NCBI GenBank assembly: GCA_025558095.1
Contig: JAIVFI010000045.1
Location: 62,001-126,000, forward strand
Direction of reading: 5' to 3'
Source: Hyaloraphidium curvatum SAG 235-1
Lineage: Eukaryota > Fungi > Monoblepharomycota
DNA length: 64,000 bases
How positions within the stretch are numbered: position 1 is the stretch's first letter; each line of letters starts with the position of its first letter. The position numbers and the translations under genes were made by a program. The notes under the pieces were generated by a model. That model had not been told where the DNA came from, ran no database searches, and worked only from the letters and a program-made list of their open reading frames with translations. Shown one piece after another: positions 24,417 to 32,302 of this stretch.

Positions 24417-27400
24417 ATGTCCAGCGACGACGAGTCGTTCGCCACGCCGCCGTCGTCGCCCGAGCCCGACGGCGGCCCGGCGGTGCCCCGCCCGCCGCCG
24501 AGGCGCGACTCGCCCGCGCTCGCGCCGCCCGCGCCCGACGTGCCCGGCCTCGCGGACGTGCTGAGAGGCCTCGACGCGCTGTCGCTGCCGAAGGCCGTGC
24601 CCGGGGAGTCTGCGGGCTCGACGGGGGCACGGGGTGGGAGGCGGGACGCGGGGACCGCAAACACGGAAGGCGGACCGGGGACGGTGCGGACGCTCCAGGG
24701 GCCCGCGGGCAAGACGCTGGAGGACCTGATCTTCCCTCCCACCCCGGACGGGCTGCCCGTTGGACCGGAGGAAACGCAAGGGGGACGGGGAAGCGCGGAG
24801 CCATCGCCCGTCAGGGGCGTGCCGCCGAGGTGCCTCGGGTCCCCTTCGGCCTCGTTCGACGACTTCTCGCGGCTGGAAGAGGACCTGGACGGCTGGGACG
24901 TCGGCTACGGACGCGGAGAATCGCCCAGTCCAGAGCCTGAGCGGCAAGAGGACAGCGAAATCGCAGACACGGTTCCCACTCCCGCCGCCGCCCCGCCCCC
25001 CGAACAAGGGAAGTCCCTGGAGGACCTACTCTTCCCTCCCACCCCCGAAGCGGACCGCGGCAGACCCCGTGCCGGCACCACCCCGTCGCCCGCCTCGCGG
25101 CCCCGCGCGGTCAGCGCCGACGAGCTGCAGACCCCGAGGTCGGCGGTGCGGTCGCCCGGCGGGGCGTACGTGCTAGACACGGACAGCGAGGACGATGTGC
25201 GCCCGTCGGGGAGCACGGCCGGGACGATGGCGACGCGGGAGGAGGTGGACCTCATGGACTCGGACTCGGACGACGGGCAGCGCGCCTTGCCGGCGCCGTC
25301 TCGGGTCGGTCAACCCCCCGTGGACTCGGATTCGGACGACGAACTGCCGGTGCTCGCGCCGCCAAAGCCGAAACCGGACCTGGACAGGTGGCGCAAGAAC
25401 AACGCGACGCCGCCAAAGAACTCGACCGTCCTCATCGACCTGACCAACTCGCCCGGAGACCTACCCGGATTCCTCCCGCCCCCCGGCAAGACCAGCGGGC
25501 CCCCTTCCGACCGGTCGCCCGGCTCAACGCCCCCGAGGCCCGTCTCGGCCCCGGTGGTCTTTGCCAAGCCGAAGCTCGTGCTCCCCGTGAATGACTCGTA
25601 CTCCACCTTCGATGCCTCTTTCCGCGCTCCCAGCAAACCCCTCCCTGCCGAGCAAACCCCCGACTCGCCCCCGCCCCCCGACTCGGCCGGCCCCGACGGC
25701 GTGCACCCCGCCCTCGCCCTGCTGACCAGCGACCCCGACCCCTCCCTCCTCGCCGACGTCGACCAGCCGCGCGACCTCACCGTCAGGCTCATGCCGCACC
25801 AGCTCGTCGGCCTGCGCTTCCTCGTCGGGCAGGAGCGCGCCTCGGCCCGGCGGGGCGGCATCCTCGCCGACGACATGGGCCTGGGCAAGACCGTCCAGAC
25901 CATCGCCCTCATCCTGGCCAACCGCCCCCGCCCGGACCCCGCGCTCGCATTCGGCCAGCCGAAAGACCGCAAGGCGACCCTGGTGGTCGCCACCAAGGCC
26001 CTGGCGCCGCAGTGGGCCCGCGAGGTCAAGTCCAAGACCCGCCCCGGGGCGCTCTCGGTGCTCGTCTACCACGGCCCCGTCCGCCCGCGCGACCCGAGGG
26101 TGCTGGAGCGGTACGACGTGGTGATCACCACCTACAGCACCCTGGAAGCCGAGCGGCGGTCGCACGCCGGGTCAGACGCCGAGGCCGAGCGGGAGCTTGG
26201 CACGCTGTTCCGCGCGCGGTGGCTGAGGGTGGTGCTGGATGAGGCGCATCTGATCAAGAACAGGGCGGCCAAGTCGAGCGTGGCGGCGTGCCATCTGGAT
26301 GCCAGCTACAGGCTGTGCCTGACGGGGACGCCGTGCCAGAACTCGCTCGAGGACGTGCATTCGCTGCTCAAGTTCCTGCGGATCCCTCCGTACGACGACC
26401 ACAAGTTGTTCAAGAGCGAGGTGCTGGAGCCGTACAAGCGTGCCAAGGGCAACCAGGCCGTGCTTGCCCTCGAGAGGCTGCGCGCGGTGCTGGCCACGGT
26501 CATGCTCCGCCGGACCAAGGCGTCTGTCGACGGCGCCGGCAAGCCGCTGCTGGAACTCCCGCCCAAGGATGTGGACCTGGTGCGGTGCGAGCTCGGCGAG
26601 CGGGAGCGGGCATTCTACGACTCGCTCGAGGGGCGGATGCGCGCCGAGTTCGAGGGGATGGCGGCGGCGGAGCAGAGGAAGTACACGACGGTGCTGACGC
26701 TCATCCTGCGGCTGAGGCAGTGCTGCGACCACCCGGCGCTGGTGGGCGCGGTGGAGGAGGAGGAGGCCGAGGTGGACAGGGAGCTGCGGGGGGCCTCGGC
26801 GGGATCGGAGGTGGACGGGCTCTCGGAGCGGCTGGCGTCCTTCTCGGTGTCGTCGTCGGCGGCGGCTGGCAAGGGCCCTGTATCGCGGGAGAAGAAGAAC
26901 GCGGCGGTGCTGGCCCGCCTCTTGCGCAGCTGGACGCCCTCGGCCAAGACGGACGCGGCGATGGACCTGCTCCGGCGCGAGCTGGAGGAGGACGCGGGGA
27001 ACAAGGTCTGCGTGTTTTCGCAGTTCACGAGCTTCCTGGACGTCTTCGAGATCCCGCTGCGCGAAGCCGGGTACCGATTCGTGAGATGTGGGCGGCCATA
27101 CTGGGCAAGGTCGTGGCTGCTGTGCTGACGTTTGTCGCAGATGACGGTACGATGAGCATCGCCCAGCGCGAAGAGGTGCTCGCCTCGTTCCGCAACAACA
27201 AGAATGTGCGGATCATGCGTGGGTGCTTTCTTTTTCATCTGGCGGAGCCCTGCTCACGGCCCTCTGCGCACAGTTATCAGCCTCAAGTGTGGATCGCTCG
27301 GCCTGAACCTCGTCTGCGCCAACAAGGTCATCGTCCTCGATCCCTGGTGGAACGGCACGATCGAGGACCAGGCCGTGGACAGGGTGCACCGCATTGGGTG

Positions 27401-27689: not shown

Positions 27690-27748
27690 GGCCGGCCATC
27701 CATTTTGTTGCCATGCAGAGTGTTGCTTCTGCCAACCCACCTTCGCAA

Positions 27749-29352
27749 ATGTCCCACGCGCTCTCGCCCGCCGAATGGGCCGCTGTGTTCCCGGCGGACG
27801 CGTCGCCCGGTGGCACGGGTGGCCTCGCGCCGTACGACCCCGCGGCGGAGCTGCGGGCGGCCGAGCCGCTGACGCCGCCGGCGACGCTCGCGCTGCTGCG
27901 GCCAGTGCCGCTGGCGTCTTTTCTGCTGAAAGTGCAGATTGCGGTCGCCGGCCGCGCCGGCGCGCTCATGGGCGCCGTGCTTTCTCTAACGTCGCTGATC
28001 GTCCCGCTGTGGACTCTCCTCCCGATGTGGCTCGCGTGCAACGGCGGCCGTTTCGCGGGGCGAGAGCTCGCCGTGGCCACCGCCTGCGTCGCACTCACCC
28101 ACGTGTGCGGGACGTGGCTGCTCATCGCGACCCCGGGCTTCGTGGACTCTTACCGCGGTCTGCGGGGCAAGGAGACGCTCGGGGACCACGCGTTCGCCGT
28201 CCTGGCCCGCTGGCTCCAGCTGGTTTCCGCTGACTCCCCGACGAGCACTTCTGGGGACGAGGACGGCGCCGGCTACGGCCTGGTGGCGCACCGTCCTGAC
28301 GACCGCGAGTGCACGTGCCCGCGCAAGGGTTGCTCGGGTTCGCTCCCAGCGCAGGCCGCAGTCAGCACACTGATGCTCACGCTCTACATCGTCCTTTATA
28401 TCTCCGCGACATCAGTACTCTCTTCGTATTCCAGCACCGTGTCACTCGCCCGCTGTACGTGGACAACGCTGTGGACCGCAACCCTGGGCGGCGTTTTCTG
28501 TGCGTTCCGATCGATTGACTGTTATCTGGGACTGACGCGATCGAGGTAGACGTTGCCTTTCTGCTACAGTCGGTTTCCTTGGCTGTCAACGCATCGGCAA
28601 CGGCCCCCTCGCTGGGTAGCATGCGCCTGCAGGCCCGGCTGCTCAAGCGAGCCGCACGGATCTGCGTGGACCGCGTCATGGAGCCGTTCCGTGCGGCGGT
28701 GGCGGCTTCTGCAGGCGGCGGACGGGCTGCCGTGCAGGGGCCGGGCACGGCCGTTGGCGGCGTCAAGTCCGTCGACGACACCGAAGAGCGCCTCGCCGCC
28801 GTCGTCGAGCTGTGCGGGCTCCACCGCTCCGCGACTGAGACACTCTCGCAACCCCCGTACCACCTTGCGGCCCCGTACTCTTTCGCGGCCTACGTCGTCT
28901 CGGGGTTGGTCGCGATGCTGGTCGAGATCCTCGCCGCCGGCTGCCTGCCTCTGTCCTCCTACACCAATATCCTCTTCATGATTCTGGGCTCCAACGCCGT
29001 GGACCTCGTGAACCTCGCCGTCTACAACGGCACCCTCACCGGCCTCCTCGACGTGTACGCGCGAGCTGGCGAGGAGGCCCGCACGGTGCTCGCCGTCGGC
29101 GCGGCGATCCCGGGCGCCGCGGGCGCCGCCTTTCGCCACAGCCTGGCGCCGGAGCTCGACGCGGTGGACAAGCTGCTGGCCTCGTTCGCCGAGATCGGAC
29201 GCCACCGGGCGCGGTTCGCTGGGTTCGTTATCACCGGATCGGTCGTCCGGTCCTATTTCACCGCGCTGCTGACGGCGGTGCTGGGTCTGGCGAGCGTGCT
29301 TCACAATTTCGGGGTGCCGTTCACGGCCGAGACGGCGTGTCCGGTGCAGTGA
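27749..29352 (+). CDS. 7-TM membrane protein, candidate gustatory-receptor-like 7TM ion channel (paralog 1)
   Basis: Two exons (intron 28500-28549) and seven hydrophobic segments. C-terminus RHRARFAGFVITGSVVRSYFTALLTAVLGLASVLHNFG..ETACP is homologous to 30798-32302. Confidence 0.7.
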
Positions 29353-29524
29353 CTTTTTCGAGCGCCGTCGGAGGAGACGCCGCAGTGACCTGATCTGTGA
29401 CTGCTTTGGGGAGAAGAAGACTGGTAGGCGTGATCTACTGCGATCCGCCATGCTACGAACATTCGCTTCGATCCAACCATCCGTTACTCTTCCGGTCCCC
29501 CGCAACTTGCCGGCATCCCACCGG

Positions 29525-30292
29525 TCACAGCTTCGAGAAGTCCGCCTGCCGCTTCTCGCGGAACGCCGCCAGCGCCTCCAGGTTGGCCGGCCCGAGGCGG
29601 AGCTTGGCCAGCCCCTCGTTCTCCCTCCTGTTGGCGAGGTGCATGGCTTCCCTGTGTGGCCCCACGAGCAGCTCCTTGGTCTGCAGCAGGGACGCCAGCG
29701 GCAGGCGGGCCAGGTCGCGTGCGTAGGCCAGGACGCGCTCGAGGAAGCCGTCGCCGTCCGGGAGCACGTCCAGCACGAGCTTGTCGGCCTTGCACTGCGC
29801 CGCCGACCACCACTCGGCGCCAAGCAGGAAGCGTGAGGCGGCCTGGGGCCCCATGATTCGCGGGAATGTGTAGGTACTCGCCCCTTCGGCGGTCAGGCCG
29901 AGGGTGGAGAACGGGCACCGGAGCCGGGCGCTCTCGGCCATGAACGCCGCGTCCGCGAGCCCGAGCATGGTCGCGCCCCATCCGACGCCGATGCCATTGA
30001 CGGCGAGAATCAACGGCTTGGGAAAATCGATGCAGACGTCCACAAGGCCCGGGAAGCCGTACTTGTAGGTGCGGCCCGACGGGCCCTTGGCCATGGATCC
30101 CAAATCGGCGCCGGCGGAAAAGGCCCGGCCGGATCCGGTGATCACGACGACCTTTGTCGCCGGGTCGTCGCGCGCCTCGATCATGCGCTCGGCTTGCAGC
30201 TCGAACTGGTCGGGATCAAAGGCGTTGAGGACGTTGGGCCGGTCCAGGGTGAGCAGGCGGACGCCGCCGTCGAGGAGGACGGACTGGATCAT
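29525..30292 (-). CDS. Enoyl-CoA hydratase/isomerase (crotonase family), peroxisomal (SKL), intronless
   Basis: LTLDRPNVLNAF, ITGSGRAFSAGADL, FPKPLILAVNG.GVG.G, PFSTLGL; ends in SKL. Confidence 0.95.
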   Translation of the reverse strand: MIQSVLLDGGVRLLTLDRPNVLNAFDPDQFELQAERMIEARDDPATKVVVITGSGRAFSAGADLGSMAKGPSGRTYKYGFPGLVDVCIDFPKPLILAVNGIGVGWGATMLGLADAAFMAESARLRCPFSTLGLTAEGASTYTFPRIMGPQAASRFLLGAEWWSAAQCKADKLVLDVLPDGDGFLERVLAYARDLARLPLASLLQTKELLVGPHREAMHLANRRENEGLAKLRLGPANLEALAAFREKRQADFSKL

Positions 30293-30797
30293 GTCCGGTT
30301 GTGGCGATTGGGCGCGATCCGAGGGGAAAGACGCGTAGGAGTCGGCGACTCGTCCGTTGGATCGGGCCGGCAGTCGGCGGCGGGTGTTGCGGAGGACGGA
30401 CTTGCCACTCGGCAAGTTCATCCCCCCCCACATCGCTGGCTCACTTTAGTAACATGTCAGCTTTTTCGGCTCCGGGGTCATCAAGGAGCGTTCGAGCCAG
30501 GGATCAGCAATCCGTCGACGCACTTGATGCGCCGTGGGAACGGCAGGGCAGCTGGCAGGCATCCTTCTTTGGGTGACATCAGCGACATCTTCGCTCGAAA
30601 GCAAGCAGGCCGTGATCGCAGATATCACTGCAGCTACGTACGCCTATCCGCGGAGGCCCCGGTCGTTTCCGTATGCACCGCCCGCCAACTCCTCACTCCG
30701 ATCGCGATCAAATACGGACCTTCGACACCGCTGCCAGCTCCTAGTCCCCCGGAGCGCCTCGCTTGCACCCCCTTTTCCGACTTTCTGGCTCCTAATC

Positions 30798-32302
30798 ATG
30801 GAAGACGAAGTCAAGCTCGACGTTGAGCCGCGGCCCTTCTCCCTCGGCGGCGCCGAGTGGCTCGCGGTGCTCCCTGCCGCGCCCGACTGGAGCCCCGACC
30901 TCCCCGCCGCGGCCCCAACGGATCCCGCCGCGGAAGCTCGCAAAGAGGCCCCGTTGGATTTCGACGCGTTTGTCGGCGCCCTGGAGCCCAAAGCGGGCGC
31001 CATGGCCGCGTCGGTGCGGCTGCAGGTGCATCTCGACCCGTGGGGCCGGCGGGCGCTGCTCCGCTCGGTGGCGGTATATCTGGGCATCGTCGGCATCACG
31101 GTCGTGTTTTGTGTCTTCGGTGCCGGCTACTACGGGGCGGCCCAGCTCGCGGCCGGGGCCGTGTCGAACCTCGGGCAGGTCTTTGCCGGCAGCCTTGGAG
31201 TCGCGCTTTTTGCCGCCTACCGGTCCTCTCTACAGGCGGTGGGGGACCGCGGGCGCGGAAAGCAGCTCAAAGCAATTGTCGACTTCTCTCATCACGGCGC
31301 GGCCGGGTTGGCACGTTGGCTGCAGGTGGCGTCGGCGCCAGCGGGTTCCCTGCTCGAACACGAACCTAACGACAGCCTGTGCCCGTGCAGCGCACCATCG
31401 TGCGCCGGCAACCTCCCGGGTTTGGCTGGCGTGGCTCGCTTCGCCGAGTCCTTCTTCAAGTTCACCATCTTTCTGCTCTATACCGCGCTGGCGGTTGCAG
31501 CTGTGGCCATCTTCCCCCCATTCTCCTCGCGAATCTGGGCAACAGTGTGGGCGGCGACCATCCTGGCCTTGTTCTGCACCGCAGCCTTTGCCTTCGGCGT
31601 CCCGGTCTCGTTCGTGCGCTTCTCCACCAACCTCCCGCTCCTCCAGCTGTCGCGGAGGGTCAACGTCGCGCAATGAGGCTGGCCCTCGCGCCGATGGTGC
31701 AGCGGTACCGCGACGCCGTGGACTCGGGAAAGTGGTCCGGCGCCGAGAAGCCGGAACGCGCATCATACATGCTGTTGCACCGCCTCCTGTCCTGTTCGTG
31801 GCGGAACAGCATCAGGACCTTCAGCACCTCCTCCCCCATGTTGCTCCCCGTCTCCACCGCCATCGCCTGCGGCCTCGTCAACATGGCCGCCGGGTCCTGC
31901 CTGCCCGCCCTGTACCCGGCCTACCTCGCCTACATCTTCGTCGCCACGCTCATCTTTGACCTGATTCACGTCGCGGCCAGCAACGCCCAGATCACCGGCA
32001 TCCGCTCGCTGTACCTCGACGCGGCACAGGAGCTCGCCGCGCTCAGGCGTGAGCTCACCTCGTGCGCCTCGTCGCCACCGGACTCCGCCCTCCTTGCCGC
32101 CATCGAGGCCGACTCTGCCGTGCTCGCGGGCTACATCGACACGGACAGGTACAGGGCTAGGTTCCTGGGGTTCGTAGTTACCTTCGGTACCGTGCGCACG
32201 CTGATCGTCACGGCGCTCACCCTTGTGCTCGGGCTGTGGAGCGTGTTCAGGAACCTGGGAATCGTGCTCACGGGGGAGCTCGCGTGCCCGCCGCGGGCGT
32301 GA
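30798..32302 (+). CDS. 7-TM membrane protein, candidate gustatory-receptor-like 7TM ion channel (paralog 2), with a 1-bp frameshift at about 31663
   Basis: Two ORFs join if one C is added (GTC[C]AACGT gives V-Q-R-R-A-M), which restores alignment to paralog 1. C-terminus DRYRARFLGFVVTFGTVRTLIVTALTLVLGLWSVFRNLG..ELACP. Confidence 0.7.

What the first reader, a model, noticed from the sequence alone, without database searches (positions are those of the whole stretch)
27749..32302. Pair of fungal 7-TM genes with insect gustatory/odorant-receptor-like (7TMIC/DUF3537) architecture
Seen: both paralogs lack a signal peptide and have seven hydrophobic segments. The TM1-2, TM3-4 and TM5-6 links are short, while the TM2-3, TM4-5 and TM6-7 loops are long. 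The best-conserved region is the C-terminus: LAGYIDTDRYRARFLGFVVTFGTVRTLIVTALTLVLGLWSVF versus LASFAEIGRHRARFAGFVITGSVVRSYFTALLTAVLGLASVL. Known: this loop pattern, with a 'GF' turn ahead of the last helix, characterises insect Gr/Or channels, plant DUF3537 proteins and Gr-like proteins reported from some chytrids. It differs from GPCR topology. Inference: a diverged, locally duplicated family of ligand-gated chemosensory ion channels in a zoosporic-lineage fungus, probably annotated only as hypothetical proteins.
Basis: partly seen in the sequence, partly recalled or inferred. Interest (0 to 1): 0.9.

Follow-up and report, generated by a model that had tools for sequence, protein, structure and literature searches.

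The report
Huge fungal family of insect-chemoreceptor-like proteins
The two genes belong to a family of several hundred genes in the fungus Hyaloraphidium curvatum whose predicted seven-helix fold best matches insect smell and taste receptor channels, a repertoire size not reported outside animals; one of the two copies has a broken reading frame.

Summary
The window is from Hyaloraphidium curvatum (Monoblepharomycota).

- **Gene A** (27749-29352, one 50-nt intron confirmed by RNA contigs) encodes a 517-aa protein annotated only as hypothetical.
- **Gene B** (30798-32302) has a one-base frame break near 31665, which the RNA contigs also carry. The 44-nt "intron" in its database model has no RNA support. 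It is most likely a transcribed, recently broken copy.
- **Not a local duplicate pair.** A and B are about 26% identical and fall in different deep clades.
- **Family size.** At least 84 full-length copies were scored in this genome. 468 database cluster representatives match at E<=1e-3, and all 15 that I looked up are H. curvatum.
- **No sequence link to known families.** No Pfam model matches, including 7tm_6, 7tm_7 and DUF3537.
- **Architecture.** Charge distribution gives N-in/C-out. Cytosolic loops are long, outer loops short, TM7 is split, and TM7b is the best-conserved helix.
- **Features not known from insect receptors.** There is a near-invariant cytosolic H-x3-D-x2-C-x-C-x4-C motif and two invariant outer-face cysteines.

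Channel function and tetramer formation remain untested. Other first-stage notes flagged this family elsewhere in the same genome.

The parts
27749..28499 (+). Gene A exon 1: N-terminal cytosolic part, TM1-TM4, including the cytosolic TM2-TM3 loop
   Evidence: ORF and splice enumeration. Identical to P0005 residues 1-250. RNA contig covers 27922-28499.
28289..28333 (+). Gene A codons 181-195: near-invariant H-x3-D-x2-C-x-C-x4-C motif in the cytosolic TM2-TM3 loop
   Evidence: H181 in 65/65, D185 in 63/65, C188 in 65/66, C190 in 66/66, C195 in 65/65 family members. The cytosolic side follows from the K+R distribution.
28500..28549 (+). Gene A intron, 50 nt, GT..AG. An alternative acceptor at 28569 (70 nt) breaks the frame.
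   Evidence: RNA contig joints 28499->28550 (depth 41) and 28499->28570 (depth 27). The 50-nt form gives 517 codons and the 70-nt form stops after 266 codons.
28550..29352 (+). Gene A exon 2: cytosolic extensions of TM4-TM6, TM5, TM6, TM7a, TM7b, outer C-terminal tail and stop
   Evidence: P0005 residues 251-517. RNA contig covers 28570-29423. Helices from the model.
29221..29307 (+). Gene A TM7b (codons 475-503), the best-conserved helix, with a conserved small/polar stripe. By analogy with Or/Gr this is the pore-lining helix.
   Evidence: Conservation 0.67. G475 in 66/66, R484 in 61, T489 in 57, T492 in 64, G/A496 in 64, S/T499 in 56. The pore role is inferred only.
30798..31664 (+). Gene B, family frame 0: N-terminal part through TM4. 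This frame runs into a stop at 31674-31676.
   Evidence: unspliced reading stops after 292 codons. 65% identity to intact paralog L013, dN/dS 0.31.
31659..31702 (+). Frame break of gene B (about 31665), and the 44-nt 'intron' of database model P0001 that bridges it
   Evidence: Paralogs P0002-P0004 read straight through here. RNA contig 31386-32165 is colinear with the genome with no gap or change, and no joint was reported at this place.
31667..32302 (+). Gene B, family frame 2: cytosolic helices, TM5-TM7 and stop
   Evidence: 75% identity to L013, dN/dS 0.20.
31326..31390 (+). 65-nt GT..AG intron used in a minority of gene B transcripts. It restores a long ORF but removes the His/Cys motif and scrambles TM3-TM4.
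   Evidence: Joint 31320->31386 (cut +5), depth 12, against the unspliced contig 31296-31415 at depth 32. 479-codon ORF. The out-of-frame stretch has maximum hydropathy 0.84 against 2.22 in the family frame.

Best explanation
Genes A and B are two members of a very large, old family of seven-helix membrane proteins that has so far been found only in Hyaloraphidium curvatum. The family has several hundred genes, mostly without introns, evolving by birth and death.

The proteins have the fold and topology of the 7TM ion channel (7TMIC) superfamily, which holds insect odorant and gustatory receptors:
- cytosolic N-terminus;
- short outer loops;
- long cytosolic extensions of TM4, TM5 and TM6 that, with TM7a, form a helical bundle (the 'anchor domain' in insect receptors);
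- a split TM7 whose membrane half, TM7b, is the most conserved helix.

The most likely mechanism, by analogy and not shown here, is this. Subunits assemble through the cytosolic bundle into tetramers. TM7b lines a central pore, and the variable outer halves of TM1-TM4 and TM6 bind small molecules that gate it. That would give the fungus a large array of ionotropic sensors for its chemical surroundings.

Two features are family-specific. One is a near-invariant cytosolic His/Asp/Cys3 motif in the TM2-TM3 loop, possibly a metal site. The other is two invariant outer cysteines, one in the TM5-TM6 turn and one in the C-terminal tail, possibly a disulfide.

Gene A is intact and transcribed. Gene B is transcribed but carries a one-base frame break, so its main product would stop after TM4. 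It is probably a recently inactivated copy.
For: Shown:
- **Homology of A and B**.
- **Organism and annotation**.
- **Family size.** 147 of 458 own-genome candidates were scored and matched. 84 full-length copies scored E<=1e-94 out of 890 first-look candidates. 468 cluster representatives match among 1.84 billion. All 15 proteins looked up are H. curvatum.
- **Purifying selection.** Paralog pairs have dN/dS 0.20-0.45.
- **Confident models.** pLDDT 89.5 and 91.3, pTM 0.89 for both.
- **Topology.** K+R per segment is 6.9, 7.4, about 9.5 and about 8.5 on the inside, against 0.5, 0.6, 0.0 and 0.6 on the outside, over 47 paralogs.
- **Model features.** Split TM7 and long TM4-6 extensions.
- **Conservation.** TM7b is the most conserved helix, and the motif counts are.
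- **RNA.** Splicing and expression of both genes, and the frame break present in RNA.

Background knowledge: the AlphaFold2 weights predate the first Or/Gr structure, so the model was not copied from one.
Against: - No sequence-level link to any known 7TMIC family. Pfam found nothing for 47 members. 7tm_7, DUF3537 and 7tm_6 gave no match in the whole genome, though that search had no positive control. The PDB profile search found nothing.
- The Gr TM7 motif is met at only 1-2 of 4 positions.
- The tetramer test gave no verdict.
- There is no functional data for any non-animal 7TMIC.
- From background knowledge, H. curvatum has no swimming stage, so classical chemotaxis is not an obvious use.
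Confidence: 0.6

Rival explanations
1. The proteins are true 7TMIC-fold relatives but do not work as ligand-gated channels. They could be scaffolds, lipid or ion handling proteins of internal membranes, or recognition and immunity-type receptors that signal through the cytosolic bundle and the His/Cys module.
For: - The fold evidence fits this reading equally well.
- Many 7TMIC branches, such as PHTF, DUF3537 and the unicellular GRLs, have no shown channel function (PMC9998090).
- The conserved cytosolic His/Cys motif and large cytosolic bundle point to intracellular partners.
- The Gr pore/gate motif is not conserved.
Against: - The strongest conservation is in TM7b and the TM7a-7b hinge, as in the channel-forming relatives.
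- A variable outer half combined with a very large repertoire is the pattern of ligand-binding receptor families.
Confidence: 0.25
2. The resemblance to Or/Gr is convergent or generic helical packing. The family is an unrelated new class of seven-helix membrane proteins.
For: - There is no detectable sequence similarity.
- TM-scores to solved chains are below 0.5.
Against: - Seven of the top seven matches are a single family, for two paralogs that are only 24-25% identical.
- The alignments run in order from TM1 to TM7b and cover 85-95% of the targets.
- The rare N-in topology, the split TM7 and the long TM4-6 extensions all coincide.
- Predicted models from echinoderm and cnidarian clusters match at TM 0.51-0.66.
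- A language-model search lists a DUF3537 cluster among its neighbours at a weak 0.92.
Confidence: 0.12
3. The ORFs are not real genes but chance open frames of GC-rich DNA or remnants of a mobile element.
For: - The DNA is about 67% G+C, so long spurious ORFs are common on both strands.
- The copy number is very high.
Against: - dN/dS is 0.2-0.45 at dS of about 1.
- Copies are about 25% identical yet keep invariant residues.
- The models are confident.
- Transcripts are spliced.
- No Pfam transposon or other domain was found.
Confidence: 0.02

Closest known systems
Insect odorant and gustatory receptor channels (e.g. AaegOR10 8V02, MhOR5 7LIC, Gr43a 8JM9, BmGr9 8VC1, Orco)
   Same: - Seven helices and N-in topology.
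- Short outer loops and long TM4-6 cytosolic extensions.
- TM7 split into 7a and 7b, with the highest conservation at the C-terminus.
- A large, fast-diverging repertoire under moderate purifying selection.
   Different: - No sequence similarity, and Pfam 7tm_6 and 7tm_7 do not match.
- The TM7 motif is largely absent.
- The proteins are about 100 residues longer, with an N-terminal cytosolic domain of about 55-70 aa and a TM2-TM3 loop of about 74 aa that carries a His/Cys3 motif.
- Two invariant outer cysteines.
- The organism is a unicellular fungus, so there are no sensory neurons.
- Tetramer formation and conductance are untested.
Spizellomyces GRL1 (the only fungal Gr-like proteins in Benton et al. 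2020, PMC7746228)
   Same: - A chytrid-lineage fungal protein with 7TMIC secondary-structure features.
- Only about one of four TM7-motif positions is kept.
   Different: - It is single-copy in each Spizellomyces species, against several hundred copies here.
- The Spizellomyces proteins were found by BLAST similarity to animal and plant members, whereas this family shows none.
- I could not compare the two directly, because no tool here supplies that sequence.
PHTF-like 'Class-B' 7TMICs (Himmel et al. 2023 preprint, 10.1101/2023.08.30.555482)
   Same: - 7TMIC fold with an enlarged TM2-TM3 cytosolic loop.
- Reported from Chytridiomycota and Blastocladiomycota.
   Different: - The PHTF loop is far longer.
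- PHTF is single or low copy.
- Class assignment was not testable here.
Plant DUF3537 proteins
   Same: - 7TMIC topology without the TM7 motif.
- A DUF3537 cluster appears among the language-model neighbours, at score 0.92, rank 23.
   Different: - The Pfam DUF3537 model does not match any member or anywhere in the genome.
- Plant families have 4-12 genes.

Membership tests
7TMIC superfamily (criteria of Benton et al. 2020 and Benton & Himmel 2023) | Seven transmembrane helices | tested here: met
   Model helices for P0005 are TM1 54-97, TM2 104-127, TM3 199-225, TM4 241-268, TM5 359-380, TM6 385-410 and TM7b 480-503. P0003 shows the same pattern.
7TMIC superfamily | Cytosolic N-terminus, the opposite of GPCRs | tested here: met
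   Positive-inside rule over 47 paralogs. K+R is 6.9-9.5 per inner segment against 0-0.6 per outer segment. This is a prediction only. DeepTMHMM was not available.
7TMIC superfamily | Intracellular loops longer than extracellular loops | tested here: met
   Mean outer loops are 6.5, 15.3 and 4.0 aa. The inner loops are about 74, 73 and 61 aa.
[not shown]
   [not shown]
7TMIC superfamily | Global TM-score of 0.5 or more to a known member | tested here: inconclusive
   0.25-0.42 to solved Or/Gr chains by Foldseek. 0.55/0.66 and 0.51/0.52 to unnamed echinoderm and cnidarian Atlas clusters, whose family I could not verify.
7TMIC superfamily | Long cytosolic projections of TM4-TM6 (anchor domain), and TM7 split into 7a and 7b | tested here: met
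   Helices 272-305, 325-349, 385-435 (one 51-residue helix), 439-469 (7a) and 480-503 (7b), with an invariant Gly hinge. Seen in secondary structure and alignment ranges. I could not inspect the coordinates.
7TMIC superfamily | Homotetramer with a TM7b-lined pore, and ligand-gated cation conductance | tested here: inconclusive
   The complex job on residues 270-517 x 4 gave no verdict. The alignment was not used and the fold was uncertain. Conductance is not testable with these tools.
Animal Gr/GRL (Pfam 7tm_7) and insect Or (7tm_6) | Match to the family HMM or reciprocal sequence similarity | tested here: not met
   No Pfam hit at E<=1 for 47 members. No genome-wide match. That search had no positive control.
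Animal Gr/GRL | TM7 motif (T/S)Y-h5-(Q/K/E)(F/L/M) | tested here: not met
   The family consensus around T492 keeps the first position only, and possibly a hydrophobic last position. The motif is described as diagnostic but not definitive (PMC7746228).
Plant DUF3537 (PF12056) | Match to the family HMM | tested here: not met
   No hit. There is only a weak language-model neighbour.
GPCRs | Outer N-terminus and a rhodopsin-like, Frizzled-like or similar fold | tested here: not met
   Topology is N-in. No GPCR appears among the listed structural matches. Two GPCR chains appear only as non-significant sequence hits at E 0.35-0.71.

The most novel reading that the evidence does not exclude
Hyaloraphidium curvatum, a unicellular fungus that by background knowledge does not swim, carries what would be the largest 7TMIC repertoire known outside animals, at roughly 400-470 genes. 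By my own rough estimate that is about 0.7 Mb, or about 2% of a 32-Mb genome. It would have arisen by an expansion independent of the insect one. On this reading the proteins work as an array of ionotropic chemoreceptors, with an added cytosolic metal-binding module and an outer disulfide. If true, large ligand-gated 7TM channel repertoires are not an animal invention, and the fungus would be a single-cell system for studying the ancestral function of the superfamily.
Probability: 0.35. Interest if true: 0.9.

Novelty: new variant of a known kind. Interest (0 to 1): 0.78.

Why it matters
The origin and ancestral function of insect-type chemoreceptor channels is an open question. Outside animals and plants, only single or few-copy candidates of unknown function have been described. 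In fungi these are one gene in each of two Spizellomyces species (PMC7746228).

A family of several hundred expressed, selectively constrained genes with this fold in one culturable fungus changes that picture. It shows that massive repertoire expansion, the hallmark of chemosensory use, also happened in a unicellular opisthokont. It also supplies hundreds of natural sequence variants for structure-function work.

I found no paper that links Hyaloraphidium to this superfamily. All 15 proteins looked up are annotated as hypothetical.

Tried and rejected
- **Word-indexed protein searches**. They returned only the window's own proteins and three paralogs. They were useful for obtaining P0001 and P0005 but not for judging taxonomic range.
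- **PDB sequence-profile search**. Only chance-level hits, at E 0.35-0.8.
- **Pfam** on gene pieces and on 47 members, and genome-wide 7tm_7, DUF3537 and 7tm_6. Nothing matched. The genome-wide searches had no positive control.
- **Tetramer prediction** of residues 270-517 x 4. No verdict. ESMFold2 did not use my alignment and the fold was uncertain. This is no evidence either way.
- **Metagenome scan.** A 10-sequence subfamily alignment gave 75 pattern matches but no confirmed relative. Sensitivity was low, since only two peptide patterns were used.
- **Language-model Atlas.** The P0005 search gave weak recognition. The P0003 search restricted to named clusters gave no usable hit.
- **Tail of the profile search.** Only the best 150 of 468 hits are listed, so members outside H. 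curvatum cannot be excluded.
- **Recent tandem duplication** was considered for the A/B pair and rejected.
- **Assembly error** was considered for the gene B frame break and rejected. RNA-derived contigs carry the same letters and the site is not a homopolymer.
- **Spliced models.** I used the spliced proteins from the database records P0005 and P0001. Exon pieces were joined only inside a script, to count codons up to the first stop.
Full report
**What is there**

The region is 65-72% G+C eukaryotic DNA. Database names identify the organism as Hyaloraphidium curvatum, which belongs to Monoblepharomycota, class Hyaloraphidiomycetes. The window is contig 45, bases 62001-126000, of a 31.9-Mb assembly.

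There are two + strand genes with a - strand gene between them. That middle gene is an enoyl-CoA hydratase at 29525-30433 (Pfam ECH_1, E 3.6e-34).

**Gene A**

- Enumerating GT/GC..AG introns left one sensible model: exons 27749-28499 and 28550-29352, with a 50-nt intron.
- This model equals the database protein P0005, 517 aa, annotated as a hypothetical protein.
- Contigs of run X1 show spliced GT..AG joints and adapter-tagged ends, so X1 is RNA. They contain the 28499->28550 joint at depth 41.
- They also contain an alternative 28499->28570 joint at depth 27. That form breaks the frame and stops after 266 codons.

**Gene B**

- The family reading frame runs in frame 0 from 30798 and meets a stop at 31674-31676. 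It then continues in frame 2 to 32302.
- Three close paralogs (P0002-P0004, 54-68% identical) read straight through this point. Gene B therefore lacks one base near 31665.
- The database model P0001 (486 aa) bridges the break with a 44-nt 'intron' at 31659-31702 that drops 15 residues.
- The RNA contig 31386-32165 is colinear with the genome, with no gap or change, and no joint was reported there. The frame break is therefore present in transcripts and the annotated intron is unsupported. Contigs cannot exclude a rare form.
- A minority joint (31320->31386, equivalently intron 31326-31390) has depth 12, against 32 for the unspliced contig. It restores a 479-codon ORF but removes the conserved His/Cys motif and reads the TM3-TM4 region out of frame. 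Maximum hydropathy there is 0.84, against 2.22 in the family frame.
- Against intact paralogs, gene B has dN/dS 0.20-0.34 at dS of about 0.7-1.1, like intact pairs. The break is therefore recent relative to the gene's history.

My reading is that gene B is a transcribed, recently inactivated copy.

**The family**

| Test | Result |
|---|---|
| Gene A C-terminal half against own genome | 147 of 458 candidates scored, all matched |
| 47-sequence profile against own genome | 84 full-length places at E<=1e-94, from 890 first-look candidates |
| Same profile against 1.84 billion cluster representatives | 468 at E<=1e-3, 426 at E<=1e-10, 307 at E<=1e-30 |

All 15 proteins for which names were retrieved are H. 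curvatum hypothetical proteins. The unseen tail of that list could hold other taxa.

Most copies are intron-less ORFs of 480-640 aa spread over nearly all contigs, with local clusters. Mean identity among sampled members is about 25%, and the median terminal branch is 0.74 changes per site. Paralog pairs have dN/dS 0.20-0.45. This is an old, constrained, birth-and-death family, not mobile-element debris.

A and B are about 26% identical. A groups with a copy on contig 40. B groups with copies on contigs 16 and 30 and with P0003. These are different deep clades (quick tree of 47 rows only). Their adjacency is therefore not a recent local duplication.

**Fold and topology**

No member matches any Pfam family. 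The models 7tm_7, DUF3537 and 7tm_6 find nothing anywhere in the genome, although that search had no positive control. A PDB sequence-profile search gives only chance-level hits.

AlphaFold2 with paralog alignments gave confident models:

| Protein | pLDDT | pTM |
|---|---|---|
| P0005 (gene A) | 89.5 | 0.89 |
| P0003 (intact relative of gene B, 58% identical to P0001 over the A2 alignment) | 91.3 | 0.89 |

An exhaustive structural comparison with 48,161 PDB representatives puts insect odorant and gustatory receptor chains in the first seven places for both models. These chains are AaegOR10, MhOR5, AgamOR28, aphid OR5 and Orco, Gr43a and BmGr9.

- 300-350 residues align in order, from before TM1 to the end of TM7b, and cover nearly the whole targets.
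- Foldseek agrees. Its top hits are Or/Gr at probability 0.9-1.0, while transporters score 0.06-0.2.
- The next matches are syntaxin-like and other helical bundles that cover only the cytosolic part, residues about 265-470.

Caveats:
- Foldseek TM-scores to solved chains are only 0.25-0.42.
- Predicted models of unnamed echinoderm and cnidarian clusters match at TM 0.55/0.66 and 0.51/0.52. These taxa have Gr-like genes, but I could not verify the clusters' identity.
- From background knowledge, the AlphaFold2 weights predate the first Or/Gr structure, so the model is not a memory of one.

Topology: across 47 paralogs, Lys+Arg counts are as follows.

| Side | Segment | Mean K+R |
|---|---|---|
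| Inner | N-terminus | 6.9 |
| Inner | TM2-3 loop | 7.4 |
| Inner | TM4-5 region | about 9.5 |
| Inner | TM6-7 region | about 8.5 |
| Outer | TM1-2 loop | 0.5 |
| Outer | TM3-4 loop | 0.6 |
| Outer | TM5-6 loop | 0.0 |
| Outer | C-terminal tail | 0.6 |

This is a clear N-in/C-out prediction. The models show the 7TMIC hallmarks at the secondary-structure level:
- TM4 continuing into helix 272-305;
- helix 325-349 leading into TM5;
- a 51-residue TM6 helix (385-435);
- TM7a (439-469), an invariant Gly hinge, and TM7b (480-503).

TM7b is the most conserved helix (0.67) and TM1-TM5 the least (0.33-0.40).

**Family-specific features** (66 members)

- **Cytosolic motif in the TM2-3 loop, H-x3-D-x2-C-x-C-x4-C.** H is present in 65/65, D in 63/65, and the three C in 65/66, 66/66 and 65/65. 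It may be a metal site (inference).
- **Two outer cysteines.** C382 in the four-residue TM5-6 turn is present in 66/66, and C514 in the outer tail in 65/66. The models place short strands at both sites, so a disulfide is plausible (inference).
- **N410 in TM6** is present in 66/66.
- **A small/polar stripe on TM7b.** T485, T489, T492, G/A496 and S/T499 have 3-4 spacing and so lie on one helical face. The stripe is flanked by R484 and R/K502. This fits either a pore-lining or a tightly packed face (inference).
- **The Gr TM7 motif** is kept at one, perhaps two, of four positions. The published Spizellomyces candidates are the same in this respect (PMC7746228).

**Mechanism**

By analogy with the solved relatives, I think the most likely function is a tetrameric ligand-gated channel. 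It would use the cytosolic bundle for assembly, TM7b for the pore and the variable outer half for ligand binding. The gene number points to sensing of many chemicals.

None of this is shown. The only assembly test gave no verdict. A non-channel role for a true 7TMIC relative is the main rival, and convergence is a smaller one.

**Comparison with what is known**

- In fungi, Benton et al. 2020 list one Gr-like gene in each of two Spizellomyces species.
- Himmel et al. 2023 mention Chytridiomycota and Blastocladiomycota, and describe Class-B (PHTF-like) members with an enlarged TM2-3 loop.
- Searches for Hyaloraphidium together with these terms found nothing relevant.
- The family fits the superfamily by fold and topology but fails every sequence-based membership test I could run.

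I therefore call it a new, strongly diverged and massively expanded variant, not a member of the Gr, Or or DUF3537 families.

Other first-stage notes of this scan flagged the same family at several other places in this genome. They are unchecked and are not counted as evidence.

**Handling notes**

- Read laying was given 4,651 letters.
I used the database records P0005 and P0001 instead.

Noticed in passing
window 29525-30433 (-), 30567-30641: The enoyl-CoA hydratase gene between A and B ends in the tripeptide SKL, a peroxisomal-type signal. RNA contigs show a - strand intron at 30567-30641, upstream of its ATG. Its first exon therefore lies within about 150 nt of gene B's start codon, and the two divergent transcripts share contig 30642-31325.
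   Followed up: partly
window 28500-28569: Gene A uses two acceptors. The 50-nt intron (depth 41) gives the full protein. The 70-nt intron (depth 27) breaks the frame and would give a 266-codon product ending after TM4. This is a sizeable share of an apparently unproductive isoform.
   Followed up: partly
window 32164-32219: There is an RNA joint with CT..AC ends, which is a - strand GT..AG intron, inside the TM7-coding end of gene B. It indicates an antisense transcript that overlaps gene B's 3' end. No obvious - strand ORF was seen.
   Followed up: no
window 27700-27922: The RNA contig of gene A begins at 27922 with adapter letters, and no contig covers 27700-27921. The annotated start codon (27749) and the first 58 codons are therefore not covered in this run. 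That N-terminal stretch is conserved in paralogs. An upstream in-frame ATG at 27713 is also possible.
   Followed up: no
window 24417-27128 (+): A long ORF upstream has a low-complexity Pro/Ser-rich N-terminal half and a helicase-like GxGKT motif. It continues in another frame towards about 27400, and is probably an SNF2-type ATPase with introns. It was read from the translation only.
   Followed up: no
G000 contigs 39 (110-148 kb), 12 (710-732 kb), 5 (783-796 kb), 17 (571-583 kb): Family members often lie in local clusters of 3-6 copies on both strands, besides many dispersed copies. In one search, 8 of the 147 matched places have internal stops and many have open frames of only 130-160 aa, so there are fragments or pseudogenes.
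   Followed up: partly
[not shown]
   Followed up: no
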